Of a stretch of DNA of 64,000 nt, positions 1 through 12,433 are shown piece after piece (the stretch's first letter is position 1; the number at the start of each line of letters is the position of its first letter). Source of the DNA: Obrimoposthia wandeli. Lineage: Eukaryota. The notes below the pieces were generated by a model. That model was not told where the DNA came from, made no database searches, and was given only the letters and a program-made list of their open reading frames with translations. Location of the stretch: NCBI GenBank assembly GCA_977020255.1, contig CDROCS010000506.1, forward strand, positions 2,356,001-2,420,000. The letters run 5' to 3'. The translations under genes were made by a program, and so were the position numbers.

Positions 1-60
1 AAATCAAGCTGCGTTACTCATTACTTATTGAGGTAATTATGACCTTAAATATTGCCCTAA

Positions 61-972
61 TCAGGCTCTTAATTTTTGTACGCCACTGACAACCAATAAC
101 ACAATAAAACCAGCCAACAATCCGACTAAGCCATCGATCACAATCGGTGCAACAGTGCTGACTACCACGTTATGTGCGAATGCTTCTGGTAACATCGCTA
201 GTAGCGAATGAACCACATCGTGAGAGCCCGGAATACTGTGCAACACGATACTGCCACCGACTAAGAACATCGCAACCGTACCTATGACAGCTAATGAACG
301 CATCAGTTTTGGTGCAAAAGTCAGTAAGCCATTACCTAAATAATGTTTCAGCGTTTTTACTCGGCTGTTATTCACGAGATATAAACCCACATCATCCATT
401 TTGACGATACCTGCAACCAAGCCATAAACACCCACTGTCATGAGCACCGCGATCAAACTGACTACGGTTAGCTGGGTAGCTAATGATTCAATTTGTACTG
501 TGCCTAAGGCGATCACGATAATTTCGGCGGATAAGATGAAATCGGTACGAATAGCGCCTTTGACTTTTTGATTCTCGAACTCTTCAACGGATAATCCAGC
601 TAAAGCATCATCGTCAGTATTATCTTCATGCTCGGGTGCTGACTTCGCATGATGCAGCTTCTCGGCACCTTCAAAGCATAAAAATAAGCCACCGATAAGT
701 AACAGAGGGGTAATTAACCAAGGGGCGATGGCGCTAATGAGGAGGGCTGCAGGTACTAAAATTGCTTTGTTCTTAAAAGAACCTTTGGCGACCTTCCAAA
801 CAACGGGGAGTTCGCGGTCTGCACTGACGCCTGAGACTTGTTGGGCATTGAGCGCCAGATCATCACCTAACACGCCTGCGGTTTTCTTTGCGGCGACTTT
901 TGTCATCAATGCGACATCATCTAATACAGATGCGATATCATCGAGTAGGGCGATTAAACTTAATCCTGCCAT
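61..972 (-). CDS. DUF808 family inner membrane protein (YedI-like)
   Basis: N-terminus MAGLSLIALLDDIASVLDDVALMTKVAAKKTAGVLGDDLALNAQQV and GAIRTDFILSAEII are typical of DUF808. Start set at ATG 972; the ORF track extends to 993. Confidence 0.85.
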   Translation of the reverse strand: MAGLSLIALLDDIASVLDDVALMTKVAAKKTAGVLGDDLALNAQQVSGVSADRELPVVWKVAKGSFKNKAILVPAALLISAIAPWLITPLLLIGGLFLCFEGAEKLHHAKSAPEHEDNTDDDALAGLSVEEFENQKVKGAIRTDFILSAEIIVIALGTVQIESLATQLTVVSLIAVLMTVGVYGLVAGIVKMDDVGLYLVNNSRVKTLKHYLGNGLLTFAPKLMRSLAVIGTVAMFLVGGSIVLHSIPGSHDVVHSLLAMLPEAFAHNVVVSTVAPIVIDGLVGLLAGFIVLLVVSGVQKLRA

Positions 973-1050
973 GGTTGCTCTCCTGTGAGCCAAGTTATGT
1001 TATACGTTTCTTTATAAAACAGTATAAACAAAAAGATCCAACCAGCATAA

Positions 1051-1078
1051 ATAAAAAAACCTGCTCGGGAGCAGGTTT
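1051..1078 (-). terminator. Intrinsic terminator of srmB
   Basis: Stem AAACCTGCTC/GAGCAGGTTT followed on the minus strand by a U-run, just past the srmB stop. Confidence 0.8.
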
Positions 1079-1084
1079 GTAGGA

Positions 1085-2467
1085 TTAATCTTCTTCGTGA
1101 CCATCGTCGATGATTTCAGCTCTTGGCTTTCTCTTCATCGGAGCGAAACCACTATCAACAGCACTTGCCATTGAATCGCGCATTGATTGTTTCTTCTCTT
1201 GTTTCGGCGCTGTGTTCTGTTTGTGCGTAGGTGCATTTTTATCACCTTTACGTGCCAGCTTCGTTGGTCGACCTTGATTGCTAGCCGGTAAGCGTTTCTT
1301 CGCTGGTTTTGGTTTTAGGCCTTTAAACTTAGCTTCAAAACCTTCTAGCATAGTGCAAGGCAGTTTTACTTTTAAGTAGCTTTCGATCTTACCAAATGAA
1401 GTCCAATCTTTCGGGCTTACTAATGAGATAGCGATACCTGTTGCGCCAGCACGACCAGTACGACCAGTACGGTGAATAAAGTCTTCTGGATTAATCGGTA
1501 AATCAAAGTTGATCACATGGCTTAATGTACGGATATCAAGACCACGCGCGGCAACGTCTGTTGCAACTAATACTTCAACACGACCACGACGGAAATCTTC
1601 TAAAGTACGTTTACGTTGATTTTGTAACATGTCACCGTGAATTGAAGTGGCATTGATATCGTTATCAACTAATAATTTTGCTAGACGTTCAGTATCTGAT
1701 TTTGTTGCTGTGAAGATCAACAGTTGGCGATATTCTTCAGTTTTAGCAATGTGGACTAATTGTTCTTCTTTATGCGTTAAATTGTCAGAGAAATGCAGAC
1801 GCTGTTCAATCTTTTCATGTTGATCGTTTGAACGGTTAATCTCAATACGTTCTGGTGCGCGTAATACTTGATTACAAATATTAGCTACATCAACGTGCTC
1901 AAGTGTTGCCGAGAACAACATTGTTTGACGTTTTACGTTCGGCGCGCTGTTTGAAATTGCAGATACGTCATCACGGAAACCCATGTCTAACATACGGTCA
2001 GCTTCATCTAACACTAAAAATTCTAAGTGCTCAAGTGAAATTGAGCGGCCGCGGATATGATCAAGCAGACGACCTGGTGTCGCAATTAATACTTCTGGGT
2101 TTTTACGTAGTAATTTTTCTTGGTGTTGAAACGACTCACGACCAATAATCAATTGAATTTGATAATCTAAGCTCATGCCCAAGTGTTTCATGTTTGCATG
2201 TACTTGGATCGCAAGTTCACGCGTTGGCGCTAAGATCACTGCACGTACTGCGCGATGTTCGAAACGACGTTGCTTCAACATACGTTGTAATATTGGCAGA
2301 CCGTAAGCAATGGTTTTACCACTACCCGTTTGCGATGTAGCCATGATGTCACAGCCACCTAAAATAAGTGGGATAGCTGCTTCCTGCACCTCTGTTGCTT
2401 GTTCAAATCCTAAATGTTTGATTGAACTGATTAAACGTGGGTCGATACCGAAATCTTGAAAGCGCAA
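1085..2467 (-). CDS. srmB: DEAD-box ATP-dependent RNA helicase, SrmB-like
   Basis: Q motif (TEVQ), TGSGKT, PTRELA, TPGR, DEAD, SAT, ARGLD and HRTGRTGRAG motifs, plus a basic C-terminal tail. The subfamily call comes from overall resemblance. Confidence 0.8.
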   Translation of the reverse strand: MRFQDFGIDPRLISSIKHLGFEQATEVQEAAIPLILGGCDIMATSQTGSGKTIAYGLPILQRMLKQRRFEHRAVRAVILAPTRELAIQVHANMKHLGMSLDYQIQLIIGRESFQHQEKLLRKNPEVLIATPGRLLDHIRGRSISLEHLEFLVLDEADRMLDMGFRDDVSAISNSAPNVKRQTMLFSATLEHVDVANICNQVLRAPERIEINRSNDQHEKIEQRLHFSDNLTHKEEQLVHIAKTEEYRQLLIFTATKSDTERLAKLLVDNDINATSIHGDMLQNQRKRTLEDFRRGRVEVLVATDVAARGLDIRTLSHVINFDLPINPEDFIHRTGRTGRAGATGIAISLVSPKDWTSFGKIESYLKVKLPCTMLEGFEAKFKGLKPKPAKKRLPASNQGRPTKLARKGDKNAPTHKQNTAPKQEKKQSMRDSMASAVDSGFAPMKRKPRAEIIDDGHEED

Positions 2468-2621
2468 AGAAGCTACCTCTTAAATATAATTAGAATAATT
2501 GCTAGAAAGCATTTATGGGGCAGGAACTATATAGGAGCATTGCTCAAATTCCAACCCTATTTTCTAGTCGATGCTTACTATTGTACAGCATAAACCGAGC
2601 AGGCTAGCAGAAATAAACCAT

Positions 2622-2644
2622 TATCCGCTTTGAAAAAGCGGATA
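2622..2644. other. Perfect 10-bp inverted repeat in the divergent srmB/kinase intergenic region
   Basis: TATCCGCTTT-gaa-AAAGCGGATA. Function (operator or hairpin) unknown. Confidence 0.5.
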
Positions 2645-2740
2645 TGAATTTTGTAATAGTCAAAAAACCACAGATATTCAAGCAATTTTGGCAATATTGG
2701 CTAAATTTATTACATAGCAAGTAATAAGGATATATGTGTC

Positions 2741-4375
2741 ATGCGTGCAGTTAAGATTGATTCAAGTAAGGTTGTATTACAACATTCTTTGTACAACAAC
2801 ATACGAACATTATTATTATTCATGTTGGTGATTGTTGTGACGGGGATGTTTGTCGCTGTGGAGATGACAAGCTTGCAAGCGAACCCAGAGCAAGTTACCG
2901 CGTTAACATCGCTAAAGTTCAATTTATTATGGGTAACTCTACCCCTATTATTCATGTGCTTGTTCATCTCGAAGCTAGTCTTGAATAGACTGGTAACAAA
3001 ACCATTAGCCACGTTGCAAGCTCGATATCAGCAAGCCATCGATGAAAAAGAAAGTCAGGCGATCTCTTTGTGCTCTCCTTATATAGAACTAGACGGACTA
3101 ATTAATTTAGTGAATAAAGAGCTGGAGCAGTCAGCGCCCTCGAAAATCAATACACTATTATCAGGGCAATCTAAGCAGCAATTTGTGGAAAGCTTAGCCA
3201 ATAATATTCGCACGCCAATGAATAGTATTTTAGGGACCGCGGAACTGTTATGTGAAATGCCACAAGATATGAAATCAGCTGAATATTTGAAACTGATGCA
3301 ACATTCTGCCACCCATATGCAAATGGTACTAAATGATGTTGTGGATTATTCTAAAATAGAGTCGGGTAGTTTAGAGTTAGCGGCTGTGCGGTTTGATTTA
3401 TTAGTGATACTTGATCAGGTTTATACTTCGCTACGCCCGTTAATGAATCATAATTTACGCGTGCGTTTTAGTTTGAACTACGATGAAGATTTACACCGCT
3501 TTTATATTGGTGACCCGATTCGTCTGCAACAAGTGTTAGTTAACTTGGTTGCCAATGCGTTGAAATTTACCGATAGAGGATTTGTAGAGCTCAAAGTCAT
3601 CTGCAGTCAGGTTGATGATAGCGATGAAAACGGTGAAATGGCTGATCTTGTTTTTACTGTCAGTGATTCGGGGGTCGGTATCCCCGCGAATAAGTTGGCG
3701 CACTTATTTGATAATAAACAACAGTCGTATAATAAGGCGAATGACTTACCGTGTGGTGGTCTAAGCTTAGCCATTTGCTCACGTTTAATTAATCTGATGC
3801 AAGGGCATCTACAGGTCGACAGTACGTTAGGGGAAGGGGCGCAGTTTAAAATAAATTTAAAGTTGCAGCGTGCTTATCAATTACGTACTCAGCATATTGT
3901 CGGCAGTAATGATCTCGCCGTGGATAAATTAGTGGGACTTAAGGTATTGCTGATTGAAGATGATAAAATAAATCAACTAGTCACTCAACAGGTGATGGCA
4001 CAGTTACAGATGGAGGTAATTACTGCGAATAACGGTTTAGCAGCGTTAGAGCAGATGAAAAAATATAACTTTGATGTTGTTTATACGCAGATACCAGGCG
4101 TAGATGGTATTGCAGCCACTAAAATACTGCGTTCTGGTTGTAGTGATAAAATTGGTTTTGGTCATAATCCCCCGCCCATTATTGCGTTAGTTGAGGATAG
4201 CTTAAAATTTGATTTACAGCGTTGTTTGCATGATCAGATGCAAGGTTGTATTAACAAACCTATATCCAGACAAAGCTTAATTGATGAGACTGTACGTGTA
4301 CTTGGTTTTGAATTACCTGACTCTGATGTGGTGTTGCCGTTCAATAAAAAAATAAAAGTCGGCTCAGAGGAATAG
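2741..4375 (+). CDS. Hybrid sensor histidine kinase/receiver-like protein with degenerate phosphorylation sites (pseudokinase)
   Basis: Two TM helices, a HisKA-like segment (NNIRTPMN), HATPase N-box (NLVANALKFT) and G1 (DSGVGI), and a C-terminal receiver fold (LLIEDD...NKP). The phospho-His and phospho-Asp are absent. Confidence 0.85.
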   Translation: MRAVKIDSSKVVLQHSLYNNIRTLLLFMLVIVVTGMFVAVEMTSLQANPEQVTALTSLKFNLLWVTLPLLFMCLFISKLVLNRLVTKPLATLQARYQQAIDEKESQAISLCSPYIELDGLINLVNKELEQSAPSKINTLLSGQSKQQFVESLANNIRTPMNSILGTAELLCEMPQDMKSAEYLKLMQHSATHMQMVLNDVVDYSKIESGSLELAAVRFDLLVILDQVYTSLRPLMNHNLRVRFSLNYDEDLHRFYIGDPIRLQQVLVNLVANALKFTDRGFVELKVICSQVDDSDENGEMADLVFTVSDSGVGIPANKLAHLFDNKQQSYNKANDLPCGGLSLAICSRLINLMQGHLQVDSTLGEGAQFKINLKLQRAYQLRTQHIVGSNDLAVDKLVGLKVLLIEDDKINQLVTQQVMAQLQMEVITANNGLAALEQMKKYNFDVVYTQIPGVDGIAATKILRSGCSDKIGFGHNPPPIIALVEDSLKFDLQRCLHDQMQGCINKPISRQSLIDETVRVLGFELPDSDVVLPFNKKIKVGSEE

Positions 4376-4426
4376 TGTTAATCGAGTATTTTCAGTGATG
4401 CAGACTCTATTTATGCCATGATAATG

Positions 4427-4573
4427 TTATGCCACTATCATGCTTTTTAGCGCAAGTTGGTCGGTAATATCAAGGTTCAGTTCATCACACGCTTCTTCAA
4501 ATGTTTTACCTAAATGGCAAATGTACATTTCAATCGCGATAAGATGATTCTGTAATGCTTGTTGCTGTTCCAT
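4427..4573 (-). CDS. Small hypothetical protein, 48 aa (not in the ORF track)
   Basis: Manual translation MEQQQALQNHLIAIEMYICHLGKTFEEACDELNLDITDQLALKSMIVA*. A GGAG Shine-Dalgarno lies upstream of the ATG. There is an alternative in-frame ATG at 4588. Confidence 0.6.
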   Translation of the reverse strand: MEQQQALQNHLIAIEMYICHLGKTFEEACDELNLDITDQLALKSMIVA

Positions 4574-4768
4574 GATGATAATCTCCATCTGTGTTTATTA
4601 ACCGTTTTATGAGTGAATAAACTAGTCCAATTCGCTAATTTCTGTCTACCATTTCGTTAATATTACAGGTTGTTATGTTTGTAATTGTTAACCTGCGCAC
4701 ATTTATAGCGTTTTAATACTTGTATATAAAGATGTAAATGACTCAGTATTGAGTATTTATTCAATGCG

Positions 4769-5428
4769 ATGGAAGAGTCAAAAATGGACGTTACAACGAC
4801 GCTAATAATAAGTACGCTGGTTATTTTGGTGTGTGCTTTACTGCATTTATATGGTGCCTATAAAGAACAAAAATGGTTATTCTATATATTCAAGCCTGTT
4901 ACTACGCTAGCAATTGCCGCGTTATGCTGGCAGCTATCCCCTGAACTAAATGATTATGTTTGGCTTATCTTACTGGGGCTATTGTTGTCGACCTTAGGTG
5001 ATATCTTCCTGATGCAGCCCAAAGATAGGTTTATTCCCGGATTATTAAGCTTCTTAGTCGCCCACGTTGCTTACATTGTTGCTTTCTCTATACAGCTGGA
5101 ACTGACTTATACTTGGGCATTGATTACTCCTTTACTTATTGTCGCCATATTGTATTTAACCATATTGTGGTCATCTCTCGCAGAAATGAAAGTGCCAGTC
5201 TTGGTGTACATGAGTATTATTGTGGTGATGGCCTGGATCAGTGGTGAACGTTACTTCAGTCTAAATAGTGCAGCTAGTCTGTATGCCTTTATTGGTGCTA
5301 TCGTATTTTTGTTTTCAGACGCGACATTGGCATTCGATAGATTTAAAAAACAGTTCCATAGTGCTTATGGCGTTATTATTGTAAGCTATTATCTTGCTCA
5401 GTATTTTATTGCGCTATCAGTTACATGA
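4769..5428 (+). CDS. YhhN family membrane hydrolase (lysoplasmalogenase-like)
   Basis: Multi-TM protein with YhhN motifs FKP, GDIFL, FLVAHVAY and FSDATLA. Alternative start at 4784. Confidence 0.85.
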   Translation: MEESKMDVTTTLIISTLVILVCALLHLYGAYKEQKWLFYIFKPVTTLAIAALCWQLSPELNDYVWLILLGLLLSTLGDIFLMQPKDRFIPGLLSFLVAHVAYIVAFSIQLELTYTWALITPLLIVAILYLTILWSSLAEMKVPVLVYMSIIVVMAWISGERYFSLNSAASLYAFIGAIVFLFSDATLAFDRFKKQFHSAYGVIIVSYYLAQYFIALSVT

Positions 5429-5530
5429 GCAGTCAGATGAGCTGTTGTATAAACCATTTATGATACGTTTATAAGTTGTTATATGAGGGTTCTGCAGGTG
5501 CAAACGTCGTTACAGTAAGGGAATTAATTC

Positions 5531-7456
5531 GTGACTAAAATAAATTTATCTGGACTGAGTATTTATCCATTAAAGTCTGCAAAAGCAATTAACTTAACCC
5601 AGTCACAGGTCAGTGAAATGGGTTTAGAGCATGATCGTCGCTTTATGATTAGTGACATGCAAGGCCAATTTATTACCGGTCGAACACAACCTAAAATATC
5701 GACCATCAAGATTGAAGTGACCTCTCAAGGTATCATGCTTTCTGCGCCGAAAATGCCGCCGATAGCCCTCACGTTTAAAGAACTTCAGCAAGATTATACC
5801 GATGTAACGGTTTGGGATTCATGTATTAAAGCTCAACGCTGTAGTGAGGAGATGAACCTGTGGTTAACTAAATTCCTAAGCGTGGAATGTCAGTTGCTTT
5901 ATTTCGGCGAAGAGTCGTCACGTAAAGTCGCAAATGTTGATAAACAAGTTGGCTTTGCAGATGGGTTTCCACTGTTATTAATTTCACAATCGTCACTTGA
6001 TGAATTGAATCGTAGTACCGCACGACCAATTGATATGCGCCAATTTAGAACTAACTTAGTCGTGACTGGTTGCGAGCCCTTTGCCGAGGATACTTGGAAA
6101 CGGATCAAAATAGGTGATGCCGAATTTGAATTAGTCAAAGCCTGTGAACGTTGTATCTTTACGACACTGCCCCCGGGTGAAATAAATTTTTCTAACGATA
6201 AAGAACCGCTAAAAACATTAAGTTTATTCCGTCAAGATAGCGAGGGACGGATTGATTTCGGCCAAAACTTAATTAGTCATAATGATGCCGTGATTAAACT
6301 TGGCGATAGCATTGAAGTGTTGGAATATCATGAGCCTAAGTTTTATGCTGATAATCGTCCTAAACAGCAACCGGTGATCTCAGCATCTAAGCCGATAATT
6401 AAGCCAATAGTGAAACATCCTGCCCAGCAGCAAGCGAAAACTTTATGGGGCAAAGGCGAAACAAGGCAGCTGTGTTGTGTCGCGGTTATTGATGAAACGC
6501 CAGATACTAAAACGTTTCGTTTTCGCGTTGAACCTGCTGCATTATTGAATTATAAACCCGGTCAGTTCATTACCCTTAATCTAAAAGTTGGCCAAGATCT
6601 GGTGATGCGTAACTATACCTTGTCATCTTCGCCAAGCCGTCCTGATTTGTTAGCTATTACTGTCAAGCGAGTAACAGAAGGCAAAGCATCAAATTGGTTG
6701 AATGATAATTTAACGGTTGGCGTTCGCTTAGGTGCGTCATCACCGCGTGGGCCTTTTCATGCCTTTACTGCGACAACGCAGAAATTATTATTACTGTCAG
6801 CGGGTAGTGGTATTACCCCTATGTTGTCGATGGCGCGTTATTATGCCGATACTGAATGTGATAAAGATATCGTATTCTTTTACAGTGCAAAAACGTCTGC
6901 TGATTTAATAGCGCTTGATGAATTACAGCTACTTACTCGTCAACATACCAATATGCGTTTGGTGCTTACCTTGACGGCTGAAACTAGCCAAAGTGATTGG
7001 ACTGGATTGAGAGGGCGTATTGATCAGCAAATGCTAGCCGATGTGGTACGTGATATTAGTGAGCGCTCTGTGTATGTTTGTGGCCCTGATGCGTTTATGA
7101 CTACGATGACGTCGGCGTTAACGGCTCTTGATGTATCTGCTGATCAGCAATTTACTGAAAGCTTTGGCGATCATAAGCATTCAGAAACGCCGGGTAAACC
7201 GGTGAATATCTTATTAGATAGCTGGGATACTAGTTTTGTGGGCGATAACAAAACCACTTTATTAGAACAAGCAGAAAAAAATGGCGTCAACATTCCTTAT
7301 AATTGCCGTGCGGGTTACTGTGGCGTTTGCCGTGTAACGCTAGAATCGGGTGAAGTGCGGGTCCTTGCCGATCATGCACTCACTGATGATGGTAAAAAGG
7401 CTAAAAAGATACTGGCGTGTAGTTGTATCCCACAAACGGATATCGTTATTAGTTAG
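5531..7456 (+). CDS. ycbX: YcbX-like MOSC molybdoprotein fused to FAD/NAD reductase and 2Fe-2S ferredoxin domains
   Basis: MOSC_N (IYPLKS, DRRF), MOSC (FADGFP, FRTN, CERC), ferredoxin-reductase motifs (RNYTLSS, GSGITP, VCGP) and a Fer2 motif (CRAGYCGVC...C). Confidence 0.85.
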   Translation: MTKINLSGLSIYPLKSAKAINLTQSQVSEMGLEHDRRFMISDMQGQFITGRTQPKISTIKIEVTSQGIMLSAPKMPPIALTFKELQQDYTDVTVWDSCIKAQRCSEEMNLWLTKFLSVECQLLYFGEESSRKVANVDKQVGFADGFPLLLISQSSLDELNRSTARPIDMRQFRTNLVVTGCEPFAEDTWKRIKIGDAEFELVKACERCIFTTLPPGEINFSNDKEPLKTLSLFRQDSEGRIDFGQNLISHNDAVIKLGDSIEVLEYHEPKFYADNRPKQQPVISASKPIIKPIVKHPAQQQAKTLWGKGETRQLCCVAVIDETPDTKTFRFRVEPAALLNYKPGQFITLNLKVGQDLVMRNYTLSSSPSRPDLLAITVKRVTEGKASNWLNDNLTVGVRLGASSPRGPFHAFTATTQKLLLLSAGSGITPMLSMARYYADTECDKDIVFFYSAKTSADLIALDELQLLTRQHTNMRLVLTLTAETSQSDWTGLRGRIDQQMLADVVRDISERSVYVCGPDAFMTTMTSALTALDVSADQQFTESFGDHKHSETPGKPVNILLDSWDTSFVGDNKTTLLEQAEKNGVNIPYNCRAGYCGVCRVTLESGEVRVLADHALTDDGKKAKKILACSCIPQTDIVIS

Positions 7457-7617
7457 GTCATAATGCTTATGTATTGGGGCTATGTCTTGAAACTATGGTT
7501 TTTAATATGAGTTTAAACATGATCTTAAATATTAGATGTTTAAATATAATGACTCGCAAATTGTAATTAAATAAGTAGTGCTTTAAAATTTACCTACTTA
7601 TGTATAGGAGTTAACAA

Positions 7618-8634
7618 ATGAAACGTACACTTGCCATTGAATTCGCCCGCGTCGTTGAAGCCGCTGCACTTGCTGGTTATAAATGGTTAGGCCGTGGTGA
7701 TAAGAATATTGCTGATGGTGCTGCTGTTGAAGCCATGAGAGTGATGCTAAATAAGATCGACATTGACGGTGAAATTGTTATTGGTGAAGGCGAAATTGAT
7801 GAAGCGCCTATGCTTTATATCGGTGAGAAAGTCGGCACGAAAATAGCTGGCGCTGATGCTGTTGATATTGCAGTCGATCCAATTGAAGGTACGCGCATGA
7901 CTGCGATGGGGCAATCGAATGCGGTTGCGGTACTTGCTGTCGGTGAGAAAGGCGCATTTCTAAAAGCGCCTGACATGTATATGGAAAAATTGGTCGTTGG
8001 CCCAGACGCTAAAAATGCTATCGACTTAAACTTATCACTTGAAGACAATGTTCGTAATGTCGCAAAAGCGTTAAATAAAGACATTAGTGAACTAACTGTT
8101 GTTACTTTAGCTAAGCCGCGCCATGACGATAAAATCAAAATATTACATGCGATGGGCGTACGTGTATTCGCATTACCTGATGGTGATGTTGCTGCGTCGA
8201 TTTTGTGTTGCATGCCAGAGAGTGAAGTTGACATGATGTATTGTGTTGGCGGAGCACCTGAAGGCGTTATATCTGCAGCGGCAATACGCGCGATGGACGG
8301 TAACATGCAAGCGCGATTATTAGCGCGCCATGACGTGAAAGGTGATACGCCTGAAAACCGCGCTGCTGGTGAGATTGAAATCGCACGATGTGAAGCACTT
8401 GGCTTAGTTGTGGGTGAAATTTTACCGTTAGATAGATTAGCTAAAAATGATAATGTAATTTTTGCTGCTACGGGTATTACCAAGGGTGACTTGGTTGAAG
8501 GTGTACAACGTAAAGGCAACCAAGTGACAACTGAAACTTTAGTTATCCGTGGTAAGTCTGGCACTATTCGTCGTATTCAGTCTACGCATATGCTTAATCG
8601 TTTCGACGCCGATTTACAAGGCATCATCAGTTAA
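7618..8634 (+). CDS. glpX: Class II fructose-1,6-bisphosphatase
   Basis: GRGDKNIADGAAV, IGEGEIDEAPMLYIGE, DPIEGT and APDMYM motifs. Confidence 0.97.
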   Translation: MKRTLAIEFARVVEAAALAGYKWLGRGDKNIADGAAVEAMRVMLNKIDIDGEIVIGEGEIDEAPMLYIGEKVGTKIAGADAVDIAVDPIEGTRMTAMGQSNAVAVLAVGEKGAFLKAPDMYMEKLVVGPDAKNAIDLNLSLEDNVRNVAKALNKDISELTVVTLAKPRHDDKIKILHAMGVRVFALPDGDVAASILCCMPESEVDMMYCVGGAPEGVISAAAIRAMDGNMQARLLARHDVKGDTPENRAAGEIEIARCEALGLVVGEILPLDRLAKNDNVIFAATGITKGDLVEGVQRKGNQVTTETLVIRGKSGTIRRIQSTHMLNRFDADLQGIIS

Positions 8635-8650
8635 GTTATTCGACATACAG

Positions 8651-8674
8651 TAGCTAAATAGCTAAATAGCTAAG
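8651..8674. repeat. 8-bp tandem repeat x3 (TAGCTAAA)
   Basis: tagctaaa tagctaaa tagctaag just downstream of the glpX stop. Confidence 0.8.
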
Positions 8675-8690
8675 TAAATTGAAGATAATA

Positions 8691-8732
8691 AAAAGCCGCG
8701 CTAATTCAAGTGATGAAATAACGCGGCTTTTT
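8691..8732. terminator. Bidirectional terminator between glpX and aroH
   Basis: AAAAGCCGCG...CGCGGCTTTT with A/T runs on both sides, between convergent genes. Confidence 0.8.
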
Positions 8733-8759
8733 GGTATTCAGTATTCAATAACGTTGTCG

Positions 8760-9821
8760 TTATTTTGTTATTTCGATACGGTCACTTGCTGCTTGAGCAA
8801 GGTCAGCCAATAGCTGCTCGGTATCTTGCCAATGGATACAAGCATCAGTAATACTCTTACCATAAACAAGAGGCTCACCAGCAACAACGGCTTGATTACC
8901 TTCTTCGATAAAGCTTTCAGCCATAATACCTGAAATTTGCATGCTACCAGTGCGCATTTGAGCCATTACATCGGCTGCCACACTTAACTGATTTGTATGT
9001 ACTTTCTGGCTGTTACCATGACTAAAGTCGATAATCATTGATGGTGTTAAACCTGCTTCTGCTAATGATTTAGCTGCCGCTTCTACATATGGTTGCTCGT
9101 AGTTAGGCGTTAAACCACCACGTAAAATAACATGGCCAAATGGATTACCATGAGTTTGGTATACCGTCATTAAGCCGTCTTTATCTGGCGAATAGAAGAT
9201 GTGCGATGCCTGTGCTGCACGTACTGCGTCTATCGCAATTTTAGTATTACCATTGGTACCATTTTTGAAACCAACAGGGCAAGATAGTGCTGACGCCATT
9301 TCACGGTGGATCTGACTTTCAGTTGTTCTTGCGCCAATTGCACCCCAACTGATTAGGTCGGCAATGTATTGACCATTAACCATGTCTAAGAATTCAGTAG
9401 CAATTGGTAAACCAATCTCGGTGATATCAACCAGTAATTTACGTGCTAAGCGTAAACCTTTATTTGCTTGATATTTACCATTCAAATCAGGATCGCTGAT
9501 TAAACCTTTCCAGCCCACAATAGTACGTGGTTTTTCAAAGTACACGCGCATTGCAATCACTAAGCTGTCTTTATACTGTTCTTGCAATGGTTTTAGACGA
9601 CGCGCGTAATCTAGCGCGGCGTTAGTATCATGAATTGAGCAAGGACCAATGATAACCAGCAGGCGTTTATCTTTACCTTCAATAATCGCTTCTATCTCTC
9701 GGCGTTTATTAACTAGTTGCTGTGCGGCGTTATCAGATAATGGAAACTCTTTAATCAGTTGACTCGGAGTGATCACCTGATCGATATAGGTAGTTCTAAG
9801 TTCGTCTGTTTTAATTGTCAT
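8760..9821 (-). CDS. aroH: DAHP synthase class I, AroH-like
   Basis: GPCSIHD, YFEKPRT, GWKG, GARTTESQIHREMAS and SITD motifs. N-terminal KTDELRT resembles the Trp-sensitive isoenzyme. Confidence 0.85.
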   Translation of the reverse strand: MTIKTDELRTTYIDQVITPSQLIKEFPLSDNAAQQLVNKRREIEAIIEGKDKRLLVIIGPCSIHDTNAALDYARRLKPLQEQYKDSLVIAMRVYFEKPRTIVGWKGLISDPDLNGKYQANKGLRLARKLLVDITEIGLPIATEFLDMVNGQYIADLISWGAIGARTTESQIHREMASALSCPVGFKNGTNGNTKIAIDAVRAAQASHIFYSPDKDGLMTVYQTHGNPFGHVILRGGLTPNYEQPYVEAAAKSLAEAGLTPSMIIDFSHGNSQKVHTNQLSVAADVMAQMRTGSMQISGIMAESFIEEGNQAVVAGEPLVYGKSITDACIHWQDTEQLLADLAQAASDRIEITK

Positions 9822-9887
9822 GATGTCTATTAGTCTAATTATGGGCTGTGATCAGCTTAACGTAATTTCATATTATTATAAAGATAA

Positions 9888-10346
9888 TCAGATGTCAGCT
9901 TGATTAGAATCATTAAAGCCTAATAGCAATAGGTTTTTTCCTTGCTGCTGATAGGCCAAAAAACGCTGCTGAATGTCGTTTGGTGCCACTTCTGTCGGAG
10001 CAAACCCATGCTGATGATAAAAATCGGCAAGATGGGGCAAAGCAAAGGTAAAGGTTTTATCGGTGATGAAGTGAGTACGCATATCGCGTAATAACCGATG
10101 ACCTAGCTGCTGACCACGATAATCAGGGGATACTAACATGCCAGTTAACAGCGTGAATTCTCCGATAGGACGTAAACGTGCGCAAGCGACAATAGTATTC
10201 TTATCTTTGCTATTGTTGTCTTTGCTATTGTTGTTTTTTAATACGGCTATATGCTCGGCTTTGTTGGGTCGAGAGTAGGGCAGATATTGCTTATAAAAAG
10301 GCTTAACTAACGGATTCTCTATTTTCTTTAACCACTGAAACTGCAT
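9888..10346 (-). CDS. GNAT family N-acetyltransferase
   Basis: Acetyl-CoA motif A (VSPDYRGQQLG) and FYHQHGF. ATG 10346 has an AAGGG RBS; the ORF track extends to 10376. Confidence 0.8.
   Translation of the reverse strand: MQFQWLKKIENPLVKPFYKQYLPYSRPNKAEHIAVLKNNNSKDNNSKDKNTIVACARLRPIGEFTLLTGMLVSPDYRGQQLGHRLLRDMRTHFITDKTFTFALPHLADFYHQHGFAPTEVAPNDIQQRFLAYQQQGKNLLLLGFNDSNQADI
10204..10233. repeat. In-frame 15-bp tandem duplication inside the GNAT gene
   Basis: tctttgctattgttg x2, encoding the repeated NNSKD. Confidence 0.85.
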
Positions 10347-10440
10347 CTCGTACCCTTTTATTATTCGGTTTTGCATACAGATACGGTATTATAACGGTAC
10401 TATCTGCATGGGATCATGCTTTACGAGTGCTAATTATTTC

Positions 10441-11472
10441 ATGCAAATACTAAAAAATCATAATTTAAAACCTTACACCAGTTTTGGTGTTGATGCTTAT
10501 GCAGCGCAATTTGTCACAGTGACGACTTTAACTGAGCTGCAATTAGCATTAGCCATTCCTGCGCCTCAGCGCTTAATTCTTGGTGGCGGCAGCAATCTAT
10601 TATTTTGTGATGACTTCACTGGACTTGTTATCCGCATTTGTTTAACGGGTATCACAGTGAATGACGCAAACGATGACGTGGTCAGTTTACATGTCGCTGC
10701 AGGTGAAAATTGGCATGAGTTTGTCCAATGGACCTTGGCGCAAGGTTATGCAGGTTTAGAAAATCTAGCCCTTATCCCTGGTGTTGTCGGTGCTGCACCG
10801 GTGCAAAATATTGGTGCCTATGGCGTTGAATTGAAGGATTTCTGCGATTATGTCGATGTACTTGATATTGAAAGCTTAACGGTACGACGTTATACACCTG
10901 CTGAATGTAAATTTGATTACCGTGATAGTATTTTCAAAGGTGAGCTTAAAGATAAAGCAGTGATCACCGCTGTGGGTATTAGATTGCCTAAGCCTTGGGT
11001 GGCTAAAATTAATTATGGTCCGCTGGCCAATTTAGGCGCGGATGCATCGGCATTAACAATCTTTAAGCAGGTCTGTTTGACTCGCCAACAAAAACTCCCC
11101 GATCCGAATAAGCTCGGTAATGCGGGTAGCTTCTTTAAAAACCCGATCATCAATAAAGCGCAATTCGATGTGATTTTCGAAAACAACCCAAGCATGCCGC
11201 ATTATCCTGCGGGTGATAAGATTAAATTGGCAGCTGGCTGGTTGATTGATCAATGCGATCTCAAAGGTTACCAGCAAGGTGGCGCGCAAGTGCATACCGA
11301 GCAGGCCTTGGTCATCGTCAATACTGGCACGGCGACAGCACATGATATCGTCATGCTTGCCCAACATATCCAAACGACAGTATCTGCTCGTTTTGCGGTT
11401 GAACTACAGCATGAAGTGCGTTTCATTGGACGTGATGGTGAAACTAATCTGGCGGAGGTGTGCAGTGGTTAA
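10441..11472 (+). CDS. murB: UDP-N-acetylmuramate dehydrogenase
   Basis: LGGGSNLL, GLENLALIPG, APVQNIGAYG, GNAGSFFKNP and ALV motifs. Start uncertain (ORF track 10408). Confidence 0.95.
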   Translation: MQILKNHNLKPYTSFGVDAYAAQFVTVTTLTELQLALAIPAPQRLILGGGSNLLFCDDFTGLVIRICLTGITVNDANDDVVSLHVAAGENWHEFVQWTLAQGYAGLENLALIPGVVGAAPVQNIGAYGVELKDFCDYVDVLDIESLTVRRYTPAECKFDYRDSIFKGELKDKAVITAVGIRLPKPWVAKINYGPLANLGADASALTIFKQVCLTRQQKLPDPNKLGNAGSFFKNPIINKAQFDVIFENNPSMPHYPAGDKIKLAAGWLIDQCDLKGYQQGGAQVHTEQALVIVNTGTATAHDIVMLAQHIQTTVSARFAVELQHEVRFIGRDGETNLAEVCSG

Positions 11473-11473
11473 T

Positions 11474-12433
11474 ATGACAGCGTCACGACAACAGTTAATT
11501 CGTTTACTTGCCGATGGTGAATTCCATTCTGGTGAAGCCTTGGGTGAAACCTTAGGTGTGAGTCGCATGGCAGTGAGTAAACAGGTTAAAGTACTAGAAA
11601 CAATCGGCTTAGATATATTCAAAATCACCGGTAAAGGTTATAAGCTCTCATCGCCTCTGCAGTTAATTGATGCGCAGTCGATTGCAGAGGGCAGTGGGGT
11701 AACTGTTGAGTGCCACCAAGTACTAGGTTCCACGAATCAACATTTATTAGATAAAGCTGCGTTATTGCATAAAGGTCATAGCTGTTTTGCGGAATATCAG
11801 ACTGCTGGGCGTGGTCGTCGTGGTAAAAAATGGGTATCACCTTATGGGTCACACCTTTACACCAGTACTTACTGGAGTCTTGACGCCGGCATTCAAGCTG
11901 CTTCAGGCTTAAGCTTGGTGATTGGTATTGCCGTTGAGCGTACGCTGACAGATTTAGGCATTGCCAATACCCAGTTGAAATGGCCGAATGATGTCTATGT
12001 TGACGGTAAAAAAATTGCTGGGGTATTAGTTGAGATTATCGCCACTGCGGGTGGGGAATGCCATCTCGTTATTGGTTTAGGCTTGAATGTTAATATGCCA
12101 TTACAAGCAGGTCTGGAAATAGACCAAGCTTGGACTGATATCAGTCAACAGCTGCAACAGCCACTCGACCGTAATGAACTTGCAGCTGGCTATTTATCAC
12201 ATCTCGTTAAGGTTCTAACTGATTTTGAGCAGTTTGGCTTTGCGCACTTTGTCGAAGAATGGAATCGTTGTGATGCATTTAAAGATTGTCCGGTGGTTTT
12301 AACCTTAGGTGATAAGCAAAAACATGGTATTGCCAAAGGCATTGATCATACTGGCGCCTTATTATTAGACATTGACGGTGTGATCAGTCCCTATGTCGGT
12401 GGTGAGGTATCTCTACGACGTACTGATATTTAA
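11474..12433 (+). CDS. birA: Bifunctional biotin ligase/repressor
   Basis: N-terminal wHTH (FHSGEALG), STN, GRGRRG and KWPND motifs. The ATG follows the murB stop directly; the ORF-track start at 11246 overlaps murB. Confidence 0.95.
   Translation: MTASRQQLIRLLADGEFHSGEALGETLGVSRMAVSKQVKVLETIGLDIFKITGKGYKLSSPLQLIDAQSIAEGSGVTVECHQVLGSTNQHLLDKAALLHKGHSCFAEYQTAGRGRRGKKWVSPYGSHLYTSTYWSLDAGIQAASGLSLVIGIAVERTLTDLGIANTQLKWPNDVYVDGKKIAGVLVEIIATAGGECHLVIGLGLNVNMPLQAGLEIDQAWTDISQQLQQPLDRNELAAGYLSHLVKVLTDFEQFGFAHFVEEWNRCDAFKDCPVVLTLGDKQKHGIAKGIDHTGALLLDIDGVISPYVGGEVSLRRTDI

What the first reader, a model, noticed from the sequence alone, without database searches (positions are those of the whole stretch)
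2741..4375. Hybrid histidine kinase with both phosphorylation sites lost and almost no sensor domain
Seen in sequence: the H-box reads SLANNIRTPMN where the family consensus is MSHEIRTPMN, so His is replaced by Asn (codon 3200-3202). The G2 box is CGGLSLAI instead of GTGLGLAI. The receiver reads FDVVYTQIPGVDG instead of FDLVLMDIQMPxMDG, so the phospho-Asp is gone, and the conserved Thr is replaced by Val (IALVE). The ORF is still intact at 544 aa, with the N-box, G1, receiver Lys and two TM helices around a loop of only about 20 aa. No cognate regulator or HPt gene is adjacent. Inference: coordinated loss of both sites in an intact gene suggests a retained non-catalytic role, for example heterodimerising with or scaffolding an active kinase. 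RetS/GacS and DivL are precedents for such modulators. This would be an uncharacterised signalling component.
Basis: partly seen in the sequence, partly recalled or inferred. Interest (0 to 1): 0.75.

Follow-up and report, generated by a model that had tools for sequence, protein, structure and literature searches.

The report
Conserved phospho-dead, sensor-less hybrid kinase
Moritella bacteria keep, express and conserve a membrane "sensor kinase" that has lost its sensor domain and both phosphorylation sites, so it probably acts through protein contacts; related bacteria still carry the intact and half-decayed versions at the same chromosomal spot.

Summary
ORF 2741-4375 (+) encodes a 544-aa protein: two TM helices, a HAMP-like linker, HisKA, HATPase_c and a receiver. 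The H-box His is Asn (codon 3200-3202). The receiver lacks the phospho-Asp because two residues are deleted, not substituted.

This is not recent decay. About 40 Moritella orthologues (61-94% identity, 536-551 aa, all intact) share the receiver deletion. All but two small groups lack the His.

dN/dS is 0.10-0.19 overall: 0.02-0.06 in DHp, 0.04-0.15 in CA and 0.05-0.30 in the receiver. DHp and CA are as constrained as in an intact orthologue pair. Metatranscriptome contigs cover the gene as a separate unit.

Relatives carry, at the same syntenic position, an 850-aa dCache hybrid kinase with His and Asp intact. Another relative has an intermediate with Asn but the Asp kept. So the losses were stepwise, and the dCache sensor went by an in-frame deletion.

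No regulator or HPt gene is nearby. I read it as a conserved pseudo-histidine kinase with a pseudo-receiver that acts through protein contacts. Partner and mechanism are untested. It is a new variant of a known kind, of moderate interest. Public records annotate it as an ordinary hybrid kinase.

The parts
2741..4375 (+). Complete CDS of the 544-aa pseudo-hybrid histidine kinase
   Evidence: ORF list. Pfam HisKA, HATPase_c and Response_reg. About 40 intact orthologues. An RNA-library contig spans 2729-4589.
2804..2869 (+). TM helix 1 (aa about 22-43)
   Evidence: Hydropathy scan. AF2 helix 17-44. Residues 1-42 align to residues 1-42 of the dCache orthologue P0041, with score 66 against a shuffle mean of 30, sd 5.
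2870..2917 (+). Periplasmic loop of about 16 aa, the scar of the lost dCache domain
   Evidence: In P0041, about 330 aa (residues 43-375) lie between the segments that flank this loop.
2918..2983 (+). TM helix 2 (aa about 60-81)
   Evidence: Hydropathy scan. Residues 58-145 align to P0041 residues 376-463.
2984..3169 (+). HAMP-like helix-loop-helix linker (aa 82-143); the fastest-evolving and mosaic part
   Evidence: AF2 helices to residue 101 and from residue 118. No Pfam HAMP hit. Mean column conservation 0.69. dN 0.44-0.59 against relatives whose other domains differ by 0.03-0.20.
3170..3367 (+). DHp (HisKA) domain; Asn154 replaces the phospho-His (codon 3200-3202); Thr158 of the phosphatase motif is kept
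   Evidence: Pfam residues 144-209. Alignments to GacS and ShkA. This is the most constrained part: dN/dS 0.02-0.06 and conservation 0.91.
3368..3880 (+). CA (HATPase_c) domain: N-box and G1 intact, F-box, ATP lid and G2 degenerate
   Evidence: Pfam residues 257-376. Motif table. dN/dS 0.04-0.15. AF2 pLDDT is 80-90 except in the lid, residues 326-339.
3941..4267 (+). Pseudo-receiver: a 2-residue deletion removes the phospho-Asp (junction nt 4087/4088); Thr is Val484 (4190-4192); Ala is Glu485; Lys506 is kept (4256-4258)
   Evidence: Pfam residues 402-515. Alignments. dN/dS 0.05-0.30, against 0.08 in the intact orthologue pair.
4268..4372 (+). Receiver helix alpha5 plus the C-terminal tail, with a motif specific to this orthologous group (IDETVRVLG ... 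VVLP.NK)
   Evidence: Conserved in intact, intermediate and dead forms. Absent from the next-nearest hybrid kinases. Conservation 0.87.
4427..4573 (-). Convergent 48-aa ORF of unknown function that always accompanies this gene (possible partner, not shown)
   Evidence: Present in every syntenic locus. dN/dS 0-0.07. Found only in Moritella and relatives. No family hit.

Best explanation
The gene encodes a conserved, transcribed pseudo-histidine kinase fused to a pseudo-receiver. It descends from a dCache-sensing hybrid kinase of a phosphorelay that needs a separate HPt protein.

The lineage lost its parts in steps:
- First the phospho-His (His to Asn), together with changes at the receiver Thr and the residue after it.
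- Then the receiver Asp, by a 2-residue deletion.
- In Moritella, also the whole periplasmic dCache domain, by an in-frame deletion.

The protein can therefore neither autophosphorylate on the canonical His nor carry a phosphoryl group on its receiver.

What selection still preserves is the following:
- the DHp helical hairpin, as tightly as in the intact kinase;
- the CA domain, with its nucleotide-pocket residues;
- the receiver fold;
- a group-specific C-terminal tail.

My inference is that it works as a membrane-anchored modulator. It would bind a partner of a phosphorelay (another hybrid kinase's DHp or receiver, or an HPt protein) through the DHp/CA core and the receiver tail. This is the way RetS acts on GacS or DivL acts on CckA/DivK.

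Shown: the anatomy, the conservation, the purifying selection, the synteny, the order of losses and the presence in RNA libraries.

Inferred: loss of kinase activity, the protein-contact mode of action and the identity of the partner.
For: - The domains and motifs are as described.
- All 39 full-length orthologues are intact, and none has a frameshift.
- NG86 dN/dS is 0.10-0.19 for the whole gene: DHp 0.02-0.06, CA 0.04-0.15, REC 0.05-0.30.
- The intact orthologue pair P0042/P0121 gives DHp 0.036, CA 0.097 and REC 0.080. So only the receiver is relaxed.
- All forms occupy the same syntenic slot between the DEAD-box helicase and the 48-aa ORF, YhhN and MOSC genes.
- The tree order is P0042 (intact), then P0041 (Asn, Asp kept), then the dead forms.
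- The nesting of the His-bearing subclade is supported by an AU test (delta lnL 81).
- The N- and C-flanks of the dCache domain align to the short form.
- The AF2 model has well-folded CA and REC domains. Its closest structures are ShkA, GacS and RetS.
- Metatranscriptome contigs break exactly at the intergenic regions. One contig covers 2729-4589 at 99.3% identity.
- The C-terminal motif is specific to the group and survives every loss.
- Pseudo-kinases and pseudo-receivers that act through contacts are documented (PMC12632262, PMC12963549).
Against: - No partner was identified, and no interaction was tested.
- No close active paralogue was found that would make heterodimerisation likely.
- Contigs from RNA libraries cannot give the strand, and they cannot exclude DNA carry-over (tool caveat).
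- The CA domain keeps the N-box Asn and the G1 Asp under selection. One subclade has His again. So some enzymatic use of ATP is not excluded.
- The intermediate forms (P0041, P0042) are single metagenomic contigs of unknown organisms.
- dN/dS comes from pairwise counting, not from a codon model on a tree.
Confidence: 0.6

Rival explanations
1. It is a dedicated, His-independent phosphatase. The DHp domain, helped by nucleotide bound to CA, removes phosphoryl groups from the receiver of another hybrid kinase or of a response regulator. This would be like one of the RetS activities on GacS. It is still an enzyme, not a mere binder.
For: - The Thr at H+4 of the HisKA phosphatase motif is kept in every orthologue.
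- The acidic residue at H+1 is kept in most orthologues (N-D-I-R-T).
- The N-box and G1 nucleotide-pocket residues are invariant.
- The DHp is the most constrained domain.
- PMC12632262 states that the conserved His is not essential for HisKA phosphatase activity.
Against: - The window's own protein and its three closest relatives have Asn at H+1 (N-N-I-R-T).
[quoted passage not shown] It argues from domain frequencies against phosphatase activity as a general role of pseudo-kinases.
- The ATP lid and G2 box are degenerate.
- No substrate is known.
Confidence: 0.2
2. It has a structural or scaffolding role outside two-component signalling. The kinase-like fold would be reused to organise another membrane process, as the hybrid pseudokinase PsmA does with DivIVA in Streptomyces. 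The conserved 48-aa neighbour might be involved.
For: - PsmA is a precedent for a hybrid pseudo-kinase whose function does not need phosphorelay.
- No two-component gene is nearby.
- The lineage-restricted 48-aa ORF is always adjacent and strongly constrained.
- The group-specific C-terminal tail looks like a docking motif.
Against: - The DHp and CA domains remain as constrained as in the intact signalling kinase. In PsmA, by contrast, the ATP-binding motifs are not conserved.
- The tail and the 48-aa ORF already exist beside the intact kinase. So they are not innovations tied to the loss of chemistry.
Confidence: 0.1
3. It is still a phosphotransfer protein that uses non-canonical residues, or it is phosphorylated in trans. 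Candidates are His193 in DHp helix 2 and another acidic residue of the receiver.
For: - His193 is conserved in most Moritella orthologues.
- CA keeps the N-box and G1.
- A subclade carries His at the canonical site again. This hints that CA may still be competent.
Against: - His193 is not conserved in P0040 or P0041.
- The receiver's acidic pocket and Thr vary among orthologues (ED, EE, EA, EN, EG; V, A, I, T), as expected if phospho-chemistry is no longer selected.
- The ATP lid has lost its Arg and two of the three G2 glycines.
Confidence: 0.05
4. It is a slowly decaying relic with no function, not yet disrupted.
For: - It is the fastest-evolving protein of its neighbourhood: 64-93% identity where neighbours keep 80-99%.
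- Receiver constraint is relaxed 2-3.5 fold relative to the intact form.
Against: - About 40 orthologues spanning saturated synonymous divergence are all full length with no stop or frameshift.
- dN/dS is 0.10-0.19 overall and 0.02-0.06 in DHp. This is similar to the neighbouring YhhN gene (0.09-0.18).
- It is covered by metatranscriptome contigs.
Confidence: 0.05

Closest known systems
RetS of Pseudomonas aeruginosa (anti-kinase of GacS; PDB 6DK7/6DK8, 7N0E)
   Same: A membrane hybrid-type kinase whose biological action does not depend on its own phosphorelay and is exerted on another kinase through the DHp. RetS is among the best sequence and fold matches (E 7.6e-25; ranks 3-14).
   Different: From my own knowledge, RetS keeps its His, has a large periplasmic sensor with 7 TM helices and has two receivers. 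Here the His, the Asp and the sensor are all gone, there is a single receiver, and no GacS-like partner has been identified.
DivL of Caulobacter (pseudo-histidine kinase; PDB 4Q20)
   Same: An HK fold without the phospho-His, reused to sense or bind a partner (PMC4211667, PMC5361649). It matches by sequence (E 7.6e-14) and by fold.
   Different: From my own knowledge, DivL has Tyr at the His position, has PAS domains and has no receiver. Here the residue is Asn, there are no PAS domains, and there is a C-terminal pseudo-receiver.
PsmA of Streptomyces venezuelae (hybrid histidine pseudokinase, PMC12963549)
   Same: A hybrid kinase-like protein conserved across a genus and lacking the H-box His. 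Its function is independent of phosphorelay.
   Different: PsmA keeps the receiver Asp (which is not required), lacks the phosphatase motif and the ATP-binding residues, is cytoplasmic and polar, and binds DivIVA. Here the Asp is physically deleted, the Thr of the phosphatase motif and the N/G1 boxes are kept, and the protein is membrane-anchored.
Pseudo-receiver domains inside hybrid kinases (ShkA, CikA; review PMC12632262)
   Same: A PF00072 fold without the phospho-Asp, attached to a HisKA/HATPase core. ShkA is the top fold match.
   Different: ShkA and CikA are active kinases whose pseudo-receiver regulates autophosphorylation. Here the kinase core itself lacks the His.
Its own intact positional orthologue: the 850-aa dCache-HisKA-HATPase_c-REC hybrid kinase (P0042/P0121)
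   Same: It has the same chromosomal slot, 43-46% identity, the same C-terminal tail motif and the same 48-52-aa convergent neighbour.
   Different: It has the dCache sensor, the His (SHEIK), a G2 of GTGLSL with the lid Arg, and the receiver DD/D/T/K set.

Membership tests
Functional HisKA-type hybrid histidine kinase | [quoted passage not shown] | tested here: not met
   Asn154 aligns with the His of GacS, ShkA and the cytokinin-receptor kinase, and with the His of 15 canonical relatives.
Functional HisKA-type hybrid histidine kinase | Complete ATP-binding boxes (N, G1, F, G2) in the CA domain | tested here: inconclusive
   The N-box Asn and Lys and the G1 DxGxG are intact. The second Phe of the F-box and the lid Arg are lost. 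G2 is C-G-G-L-S-L. Nucleotide binding cannot be decided from sequence.
Functional HisKA-type hybrid histidine kinase | Phospho-accepting Asp at the end of receiver strand beta3 | tested here: not met
   A 2-residue gap removes it in the window protein and in all short orthologues.
Pseudo-histidine kinase (sense of Collins and Childers, as cited in PMC12632262) | HK fold recognisable, but one or more core functions (here the His phosphorylation site) missing | tested here: met
   HisKA 51.6 bits and HATPase_c 74.7 bits with Asn at the His position. The fold matches ShkA, GacS and RetS.
Pseudo-histidine kinase (sense of Collins and Childers, as cited in PMC12632262) | Retained under selection rather than being a pseudogene | tested here: met
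   dN/dS is 0.10-0.19 overall and 0.02-0.06 in DHp. About 40 orthologues are intact.
Pseudo-histidine kinase (sense of Collins and Childers, as cited in PMC12632262) | No autophosphorylation in vitro | not testable with these tools
   Needs a labelled-ATP assay.
Pseudo-receiver / aspartate-less receiver (PMC12632262) | Scores as PF00072 but lacks residues needed for phosphotransfer | tested here: met
   Response_reg scores 51.8 bits. The Asp is deleted, Thr is Val, and the second acidic-pocket residue varies among orthologues.
RetS-type anti-kinase | Direct DHp-DHp binding to a partner kinase that blocks its signalling | not testable with these tools
   No complex prediction or genome-wide partner list was available. 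No close active paralogue was seen.
RetS-type anti-kinase | Large periplasmic sensor with 7 TM helices and two tandem receivers (own knowledge of RetS) | tested here: not met
   Two TM helices, a 16-aa loop and one receiver.
TorS (TMAO reductase sensor kinase) | Reaches the NCBIfam equivalog cut-off and carries a C-terminal HPt domain | tested here: not met
   TorS is the best NCBIfam hit, at 264 bits against a cut-off of 676.5. The match covers only model positions 444-820 of 967, and there is no HPt domain. BarA and LuxQ score similarly for the intact orthologue.
Intramembrane-sensing histidine kinase (BceS/LiaS type) | Two TM helices with a very short extracytoplasmic loop | tested here: met
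   The loop is about 16 aa.
Intramembrane-sensing histidine kinase (BceS/LiaS type) | Genetic linkage to the transporter or accessory membrane protein that does the sensing, and an adjacent cognate regulator | tested here: not met
   The neighbours are a DEAD-box helicase, a 48-aa soluble-looking ORF, YhhN, MOSC/FNR and glpX. The short loop arose by deletion of a dCache domain.

The most novel reading that the evidence does not exclude
The protein is a constitutive, signal-blind brake or adaptor on a LuxU-type or Syp/BinK-type biofilm phosphorelay of Moritella. It would bind the relay's HPt protein or a dCache hybrid kinase through its DHp and its conserved C-terminal tail, perhaps together with the lineage-specific 48-aa neighbour. 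In addition, the locus would give a natural, still-living series of orthologues: intact, then His-less, then Asp-less, then sensor-less, then His regained. That series would show step by step how a sensor kinase becomes a pseudo-kinase.
Probability: 0.2. Interest if true: 0.65.

Novelty: new variant of a known kind. Interest (0 to 1): 0.45.

Why it matters
Pseudo-histidine kinases and pseudo-receivers are recognised classes. About 0.9% of HisKA domains lack the His and about 2% of receivers lack the Asp (PMC12632262). Few have been studied, and how they are switched on or off is an open question.

This case combines both defects with loss of the sensor in one polypeptide that is conserved across a genus. 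The intact and intermediate orthologues sit at the same chromosomal position in related bacteria. That gives matched natural controls for asking which surfaces stay under selection once the chemistry is gone. Here these are the DHp, the CA pocket and a C-terminal tail.

It also matters for annotation. Every public record seen calls this protein a hybrid sensor histidine kinase/response regulator, an ATP-binding protein or a response regulator. That would mislead any reconstruction of Moritella signalling, including that of the fish pathogen M. viscosa.

Tried and rejected
- **Recent decay or assembly error:** rejected, because the features are shared by about 40 orthologues and by an RNA-library contig.
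- **TorS relative controlling the torECA operon about 5.5 kb upstream:** rejected as membership. The score is far below the cut-off, there is no HPt domain, three or four unrelated genes lie between, and BarA and LuxQ score equally well.
- **Identity with the Moritella "BinK orthologue" of PMC5019070:** rejected. That accession (WP_026006314.1) differs from the M. dasanensis copy of this gene (WP_017222489.1). Whether BinK is a partner was not testable.
- **Perfect 10-bp inverted repeat at 2622-2644 in the divergent promoter region as a conserved operator:** it was not found in any of the 16 fetched loci.
- **Pfam HAMP:** no hit even at E of 1. The linker is called HAMP-like only from the model and from one source's name.
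- **Family assignment for the 48-aa ORF:** nothing in Pfam or NCBIfam.
- **First neighbour dN/dS script:** it timed out and was rerun successfully.
- **Partner search by similarity:** no Moritella paralogue appeared among the best 120 hits.
- **Not done:** the large representative search and a second structure job were not run, because the claim does not rest on absence of relatives.
Full report
**1. What is in the sequence**

The ORF at 2741-4375 on the + strand is intact and encodes 544 aa. Pfam finds three domains:
- HisKA, residues 144-209;
- HATPase_c, residues 257-376;
- Response_reg, residues 402-515.

The best NCBIfam models are TorS, LuxQ, ArcB and BarA. All are far below their cut-offs and match only the transmitter-receiver core.

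The H-box was aligned to solved kinases (GacS 7Z8N, ShkA 6QRJ, a cytokinin-receptor kinase 7P8E). It has Asn154 (AAT, nt 3200-3202) where they have His.

The catalytic domain shows a mixed picture:
- The N-box and G1 box are canonical.
- The second Phe of the F-box and the Arg of the ATP lid are missing.
- G2 reads C-G-G-L-S-L.

In the receiver, strand beta3 is two residues shorter than in every canonical relative. The missing pair is the phospho-Asp and the residue after it, with the junction at nt 4087/4088. The conserved Thr is Val484. The usually small residue after it is Glu485. The conserved Lys506 is kept.

Hydropathy and the AlphaFold model give two membrane helices (about 22-43 and 60-81) around a loop of about 16 aa. 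A helix-loop-helix linker follows that looks like a HAMP domain, but Pfam does not score it.

**2. It is not an accident of this genome**

A word-indexed search found about 40 clusters of 536-551 aa at 61-94% identity. Nearly all that carry a name are Moritella: M. dasanensis, M. viscosa, M. yayanosii, PE36, JT01, F3 and others.

What the orthologues share:
- All share the 2-residue receiver deletion.
- All have Asn at the His position, except one subclade with His (P0035-38) and one sequence with Thr (P0040).
- The receiver's second acidic-pocket residue (D, E, A, N or G) and the Thr position (V, A, I or T) drift among orthologues. This is what one expects once phospho-chemistry is no longer selected.

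Column conservation across 39 full-length orthologues:

| Region | Conservation |
|---|---|
| DHp | 0.91 |
| Receiver helix alpha5 plus C-terminal tail | 0.87 |
| CA | 0.86 |
| Rest of the receiver | 0.78 |
| HAMP-like linker | 0.69 |
| Periplasmic loop | 0.68 |

**3. Selection**

I computed Nei-Gojobori dN/dS on codon alignments of ten orthologue DNAs.

| Region | dN/dS |
|---|---|
| Whole gene | 0.10-0.19 |
| DHp | 0.02-0.06 |
| CA | 0.04-0.15 |
| Receiver | 0.05-0.30 |

These figures include closely related pairs with unsaturated dS: window against L012 (dS 0.20, ratio 0.15) and L003 against L004 (dS 0.17, ratio 0.13).

Neighbouring genes in the same pairs range from 0.02 (glpX, aroG, DEAD-box helicase) to 0.09-0.18 (YhhN).

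The intact orthologue pair P0042/P0121, at comparable divergence, gives DHp 0.036, CA 0.097 and receiver 0.080. So DHp and CA are as constrained in the phospho-dead proteins as in the intact kinase. The receiver is relaxed about 2-3.5 fold but is far from neutral.

It does not occur.

**4. Expression**

In four metatranscriptomic runs of one marine study, contigs lie on the gene at 99% identity or better. In run X1, one 1,862-nt contig covers 2729-4589. Separate contigs cover the helicase gene (up to 2549) and the YhhN gene (from 4720). The breaks fall in the intergenic regions, and a second run has a fragment end at 4589.

This pattern fits transcripts better than contaminating DNA. However, contigs give no strand, and the tool warns that presence in an RNA library does not prove transcription. 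No difference from the window is reported at the Asn codon or at the receiver junction.

**5. Where it came from**

Every member of the group lies in the same chromosomal slot. The gene order is: torECA, yaeQ, (DUF808), DEAD-box helicase (minus strand), this gene, a convergent 48-52-aa ORF, YhhN, MOSC/ferredoxin reductase, glpX, a DAHP synthase gene (absent from L016), an acetyltransferase gene, murB, birA.

In more distant relatives, the same slot holds longer proteins with a periplasmic dCache domain:
- **P0042 and P0121 (850 aa).** They have His (SHEIK), G2 GTGLSL with the lid Arg, and a fully canonical receiver.
- **P0041 (849 aa).** It has Asn at the His position, Met for the receiver Thr and Glu after it, but it still has the phospho-Asp.
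- **P0043-45 (about 750-775 aa).** They keep a weak dCache domain and have lost both sites.

A maximum-likelihood tree of the transmitter-receiver core, rooted on ten canonical hybrid kinases, places P0042 first. P0041 comes next, then the P0043-45 group and the short Moritella clade as sisters (SH-aLRT 94-100).

The fewest changes therefore are:
- one His loss before the Asp loss and before the dCache loss;
- one return to His (AAT to CAT) in P0035-38.

Forcing all His-less sequences into one clade costs 81 log-likelihood units (AU p about 5e-49). The caveat is that this group was defined after the tree had been seen.

Residues 1-42 of the window protein align to residues 1-42 of P0041, with score 66 against a shuffle mean of 30 (sd 5). 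Residues 58-145 align to P0041 376-463. So about 330 aa of periplasmic domain were removed in frame.

The losses were thus sequential, not coordinated. These inferences rest on a few metagenomic contigs of unidentified organisms.

**6. Structure**

AlphaFold2 with a 60-sequence alignment gives a mean pLDDT of 69.6. The CA and receiver cores are at 80-90. The ATP lid (326-339), the interdomain linkers and the last 20 residues are of low confidence.

Foldseek's best matches are full-length ShkA, GacS and many RetS chains, and then HK853, DivL and others. The fold is that of an ordinary hybrid kinase.

**7. How it most likely works**

Shown: the protein cannot use the canonical His or Asp. It has no extracytoplasmic sensor. 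It is conserved and probably transcribed. Selection is focused on the DHp hairpin, the CA domain and a C-terminal element.

That C-terminal element is helix alpha5 with the motif IDETVRVLG and a tail VVLP.NK. It is found in intact, intermediate and dead forms but not in the next-nearest hybrid kinases.

Inferred: the ancestral kinase lacked an HPt domain, so it must have signalled through a separate HPt protein. The descendant probably still docks onto part of that relay and modulates it without carrying phosphate. The docking target could be a kinase DHp, a receiver or the HPt protein. RetS does this to GacS, and DivL does this in the CckA pathway. I put this at about 0.6.

Alternatives, in order of my estimate:
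- **His-independent phosphatase (0.2).** The Thr of the HisKA phosphatase motif is invariant, and the nucleotide pocket is kept. PMC12632262 notes that the His is not essential for that reaction. The same review doubts it as a general role, and this strain has Asn at H+1.
- **A role outside two-component signalling, as for PsmA (0.1).**
- **Non-canonical phosphorylation (0.05).**
- **Neutral decay (0.05).**

**8. Context and leads**

No response regulator or HPt gene lies within about 10 kb.

Earlier notes of this scan, which I did not check, report two things elsewhere in this genome. One is a LuxU-type HPt protein next to a syp-like biofilm switch. The other is a Pel operon about 9 kb before the window.

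The BinK paper lists Moritella orthologues of the dCache hybrid kinase BinK (PMC5019070). The accession differs from this gene's. So Moritella has at least one active kinase with the ancestral architecture that could be a partner. This is only a lead.

**9. Comparison with what is known**

Pseudo-histidine kinases and pseudo-receivers are established classes. In the sample analysed in PMC12632262, 0.9% of HisKA domains lack the His and 2.0% of receivers lack the Asp.

The closest described cases differ as follows:
- RetS keeps its His and has a large sensor.
- DivL has Tyr at the His position and no receiver.
- PsmA lacks the His but keeps the Asp, and its ATP motifs have decayed.
- ShkA and CikA are active kinases with a regulatory pseudo-receiver.

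I found no description of this Moritella protein. Public records name it a hybrid sensor histidine kinase/response regulator.

It fails the membership tests for a functional hybrid kinase and for TorS. It meets those for a pseudo-kinase and a pseudo-receiver.

**10. Verdict**

It is a new variant of a known kind. The interest is moderate. The main value is the natural series of orthologues at one locus and the clear map of which parts remain under selection.

Noticed in passing
window 4427-4573 (-); the ORF extends to 4588 if an upstream ATG is used: A 48-aa ORF runs convergent to the pseudo-kinase gene and starts its reverse frame 52 nt after that gene's stop. It is present next to every orthologue, including the intact dCache forms. 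It is found only in Moritella and relatives (13 clusters) and has no family hit. Its dN/dS is 0-0.07. It may be a small partner protein.
   Followed up: partly
window 2741-3169 (aa 1-143): The N-terminal TM and HAMP-like part is mosaic. Against L013, dN is 0.35-0.50 here but 0.03-0.09 in DHp, CA and REC. Against the otherwise distant L008, the TM region differs by only 0.11. This suggests intragenic recombination or two old allele types of the membrane module.
   Followed up: partly
L008 8001-9638 (P0035-38): One subclade nested among Asn-bearing orthologues has His (CAT) back at the phospho-site, while still lacking the receiver Asp and the sensor. This is an apparent single-base reversion. 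It may be a natural test of whether the CA domain is still competent.
   Followed up: partly
window 1-12000 against L012, L013, L001, L015: Synonymous divergence differs several-fold between adjacent genes in the same strain pair. For window against L013, the helicase has dS 0.18 and glpX 1.09. For window against L015, the neighbours have 0.3-0.7 and the kinase 2.2. So this chromosomal region is a recombination mosaic among Moritella lineages.
   Followed up: no
upstream of the window start; L012 607-4540, L016 1860-5800: A torE-torC-torA (TMAO reductase) operon and an msrPQ-like pair lie 5-8 kb upstream in all syntenic loci. No torS, torT or torR is nearby. The kinase's best NCBIfam hit is TorS, but far below the cut-off.
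   Followed up: partly
window 2622-2644: A perfect 10-bp inverted repeat (a terminator-like hairpin on both strands) lies in the divergent region between the helicase and kinase genes. It was not found in any of the 16 fetched loci.
   Followed up: yes
window 2480: The metatranscriptome contigs of two runs carry a 14-nt insertion after position 2480, just upstream of the helicase start codon, relative to the window. This looks like a strain difference in the intergenic region.
   Followed up: no
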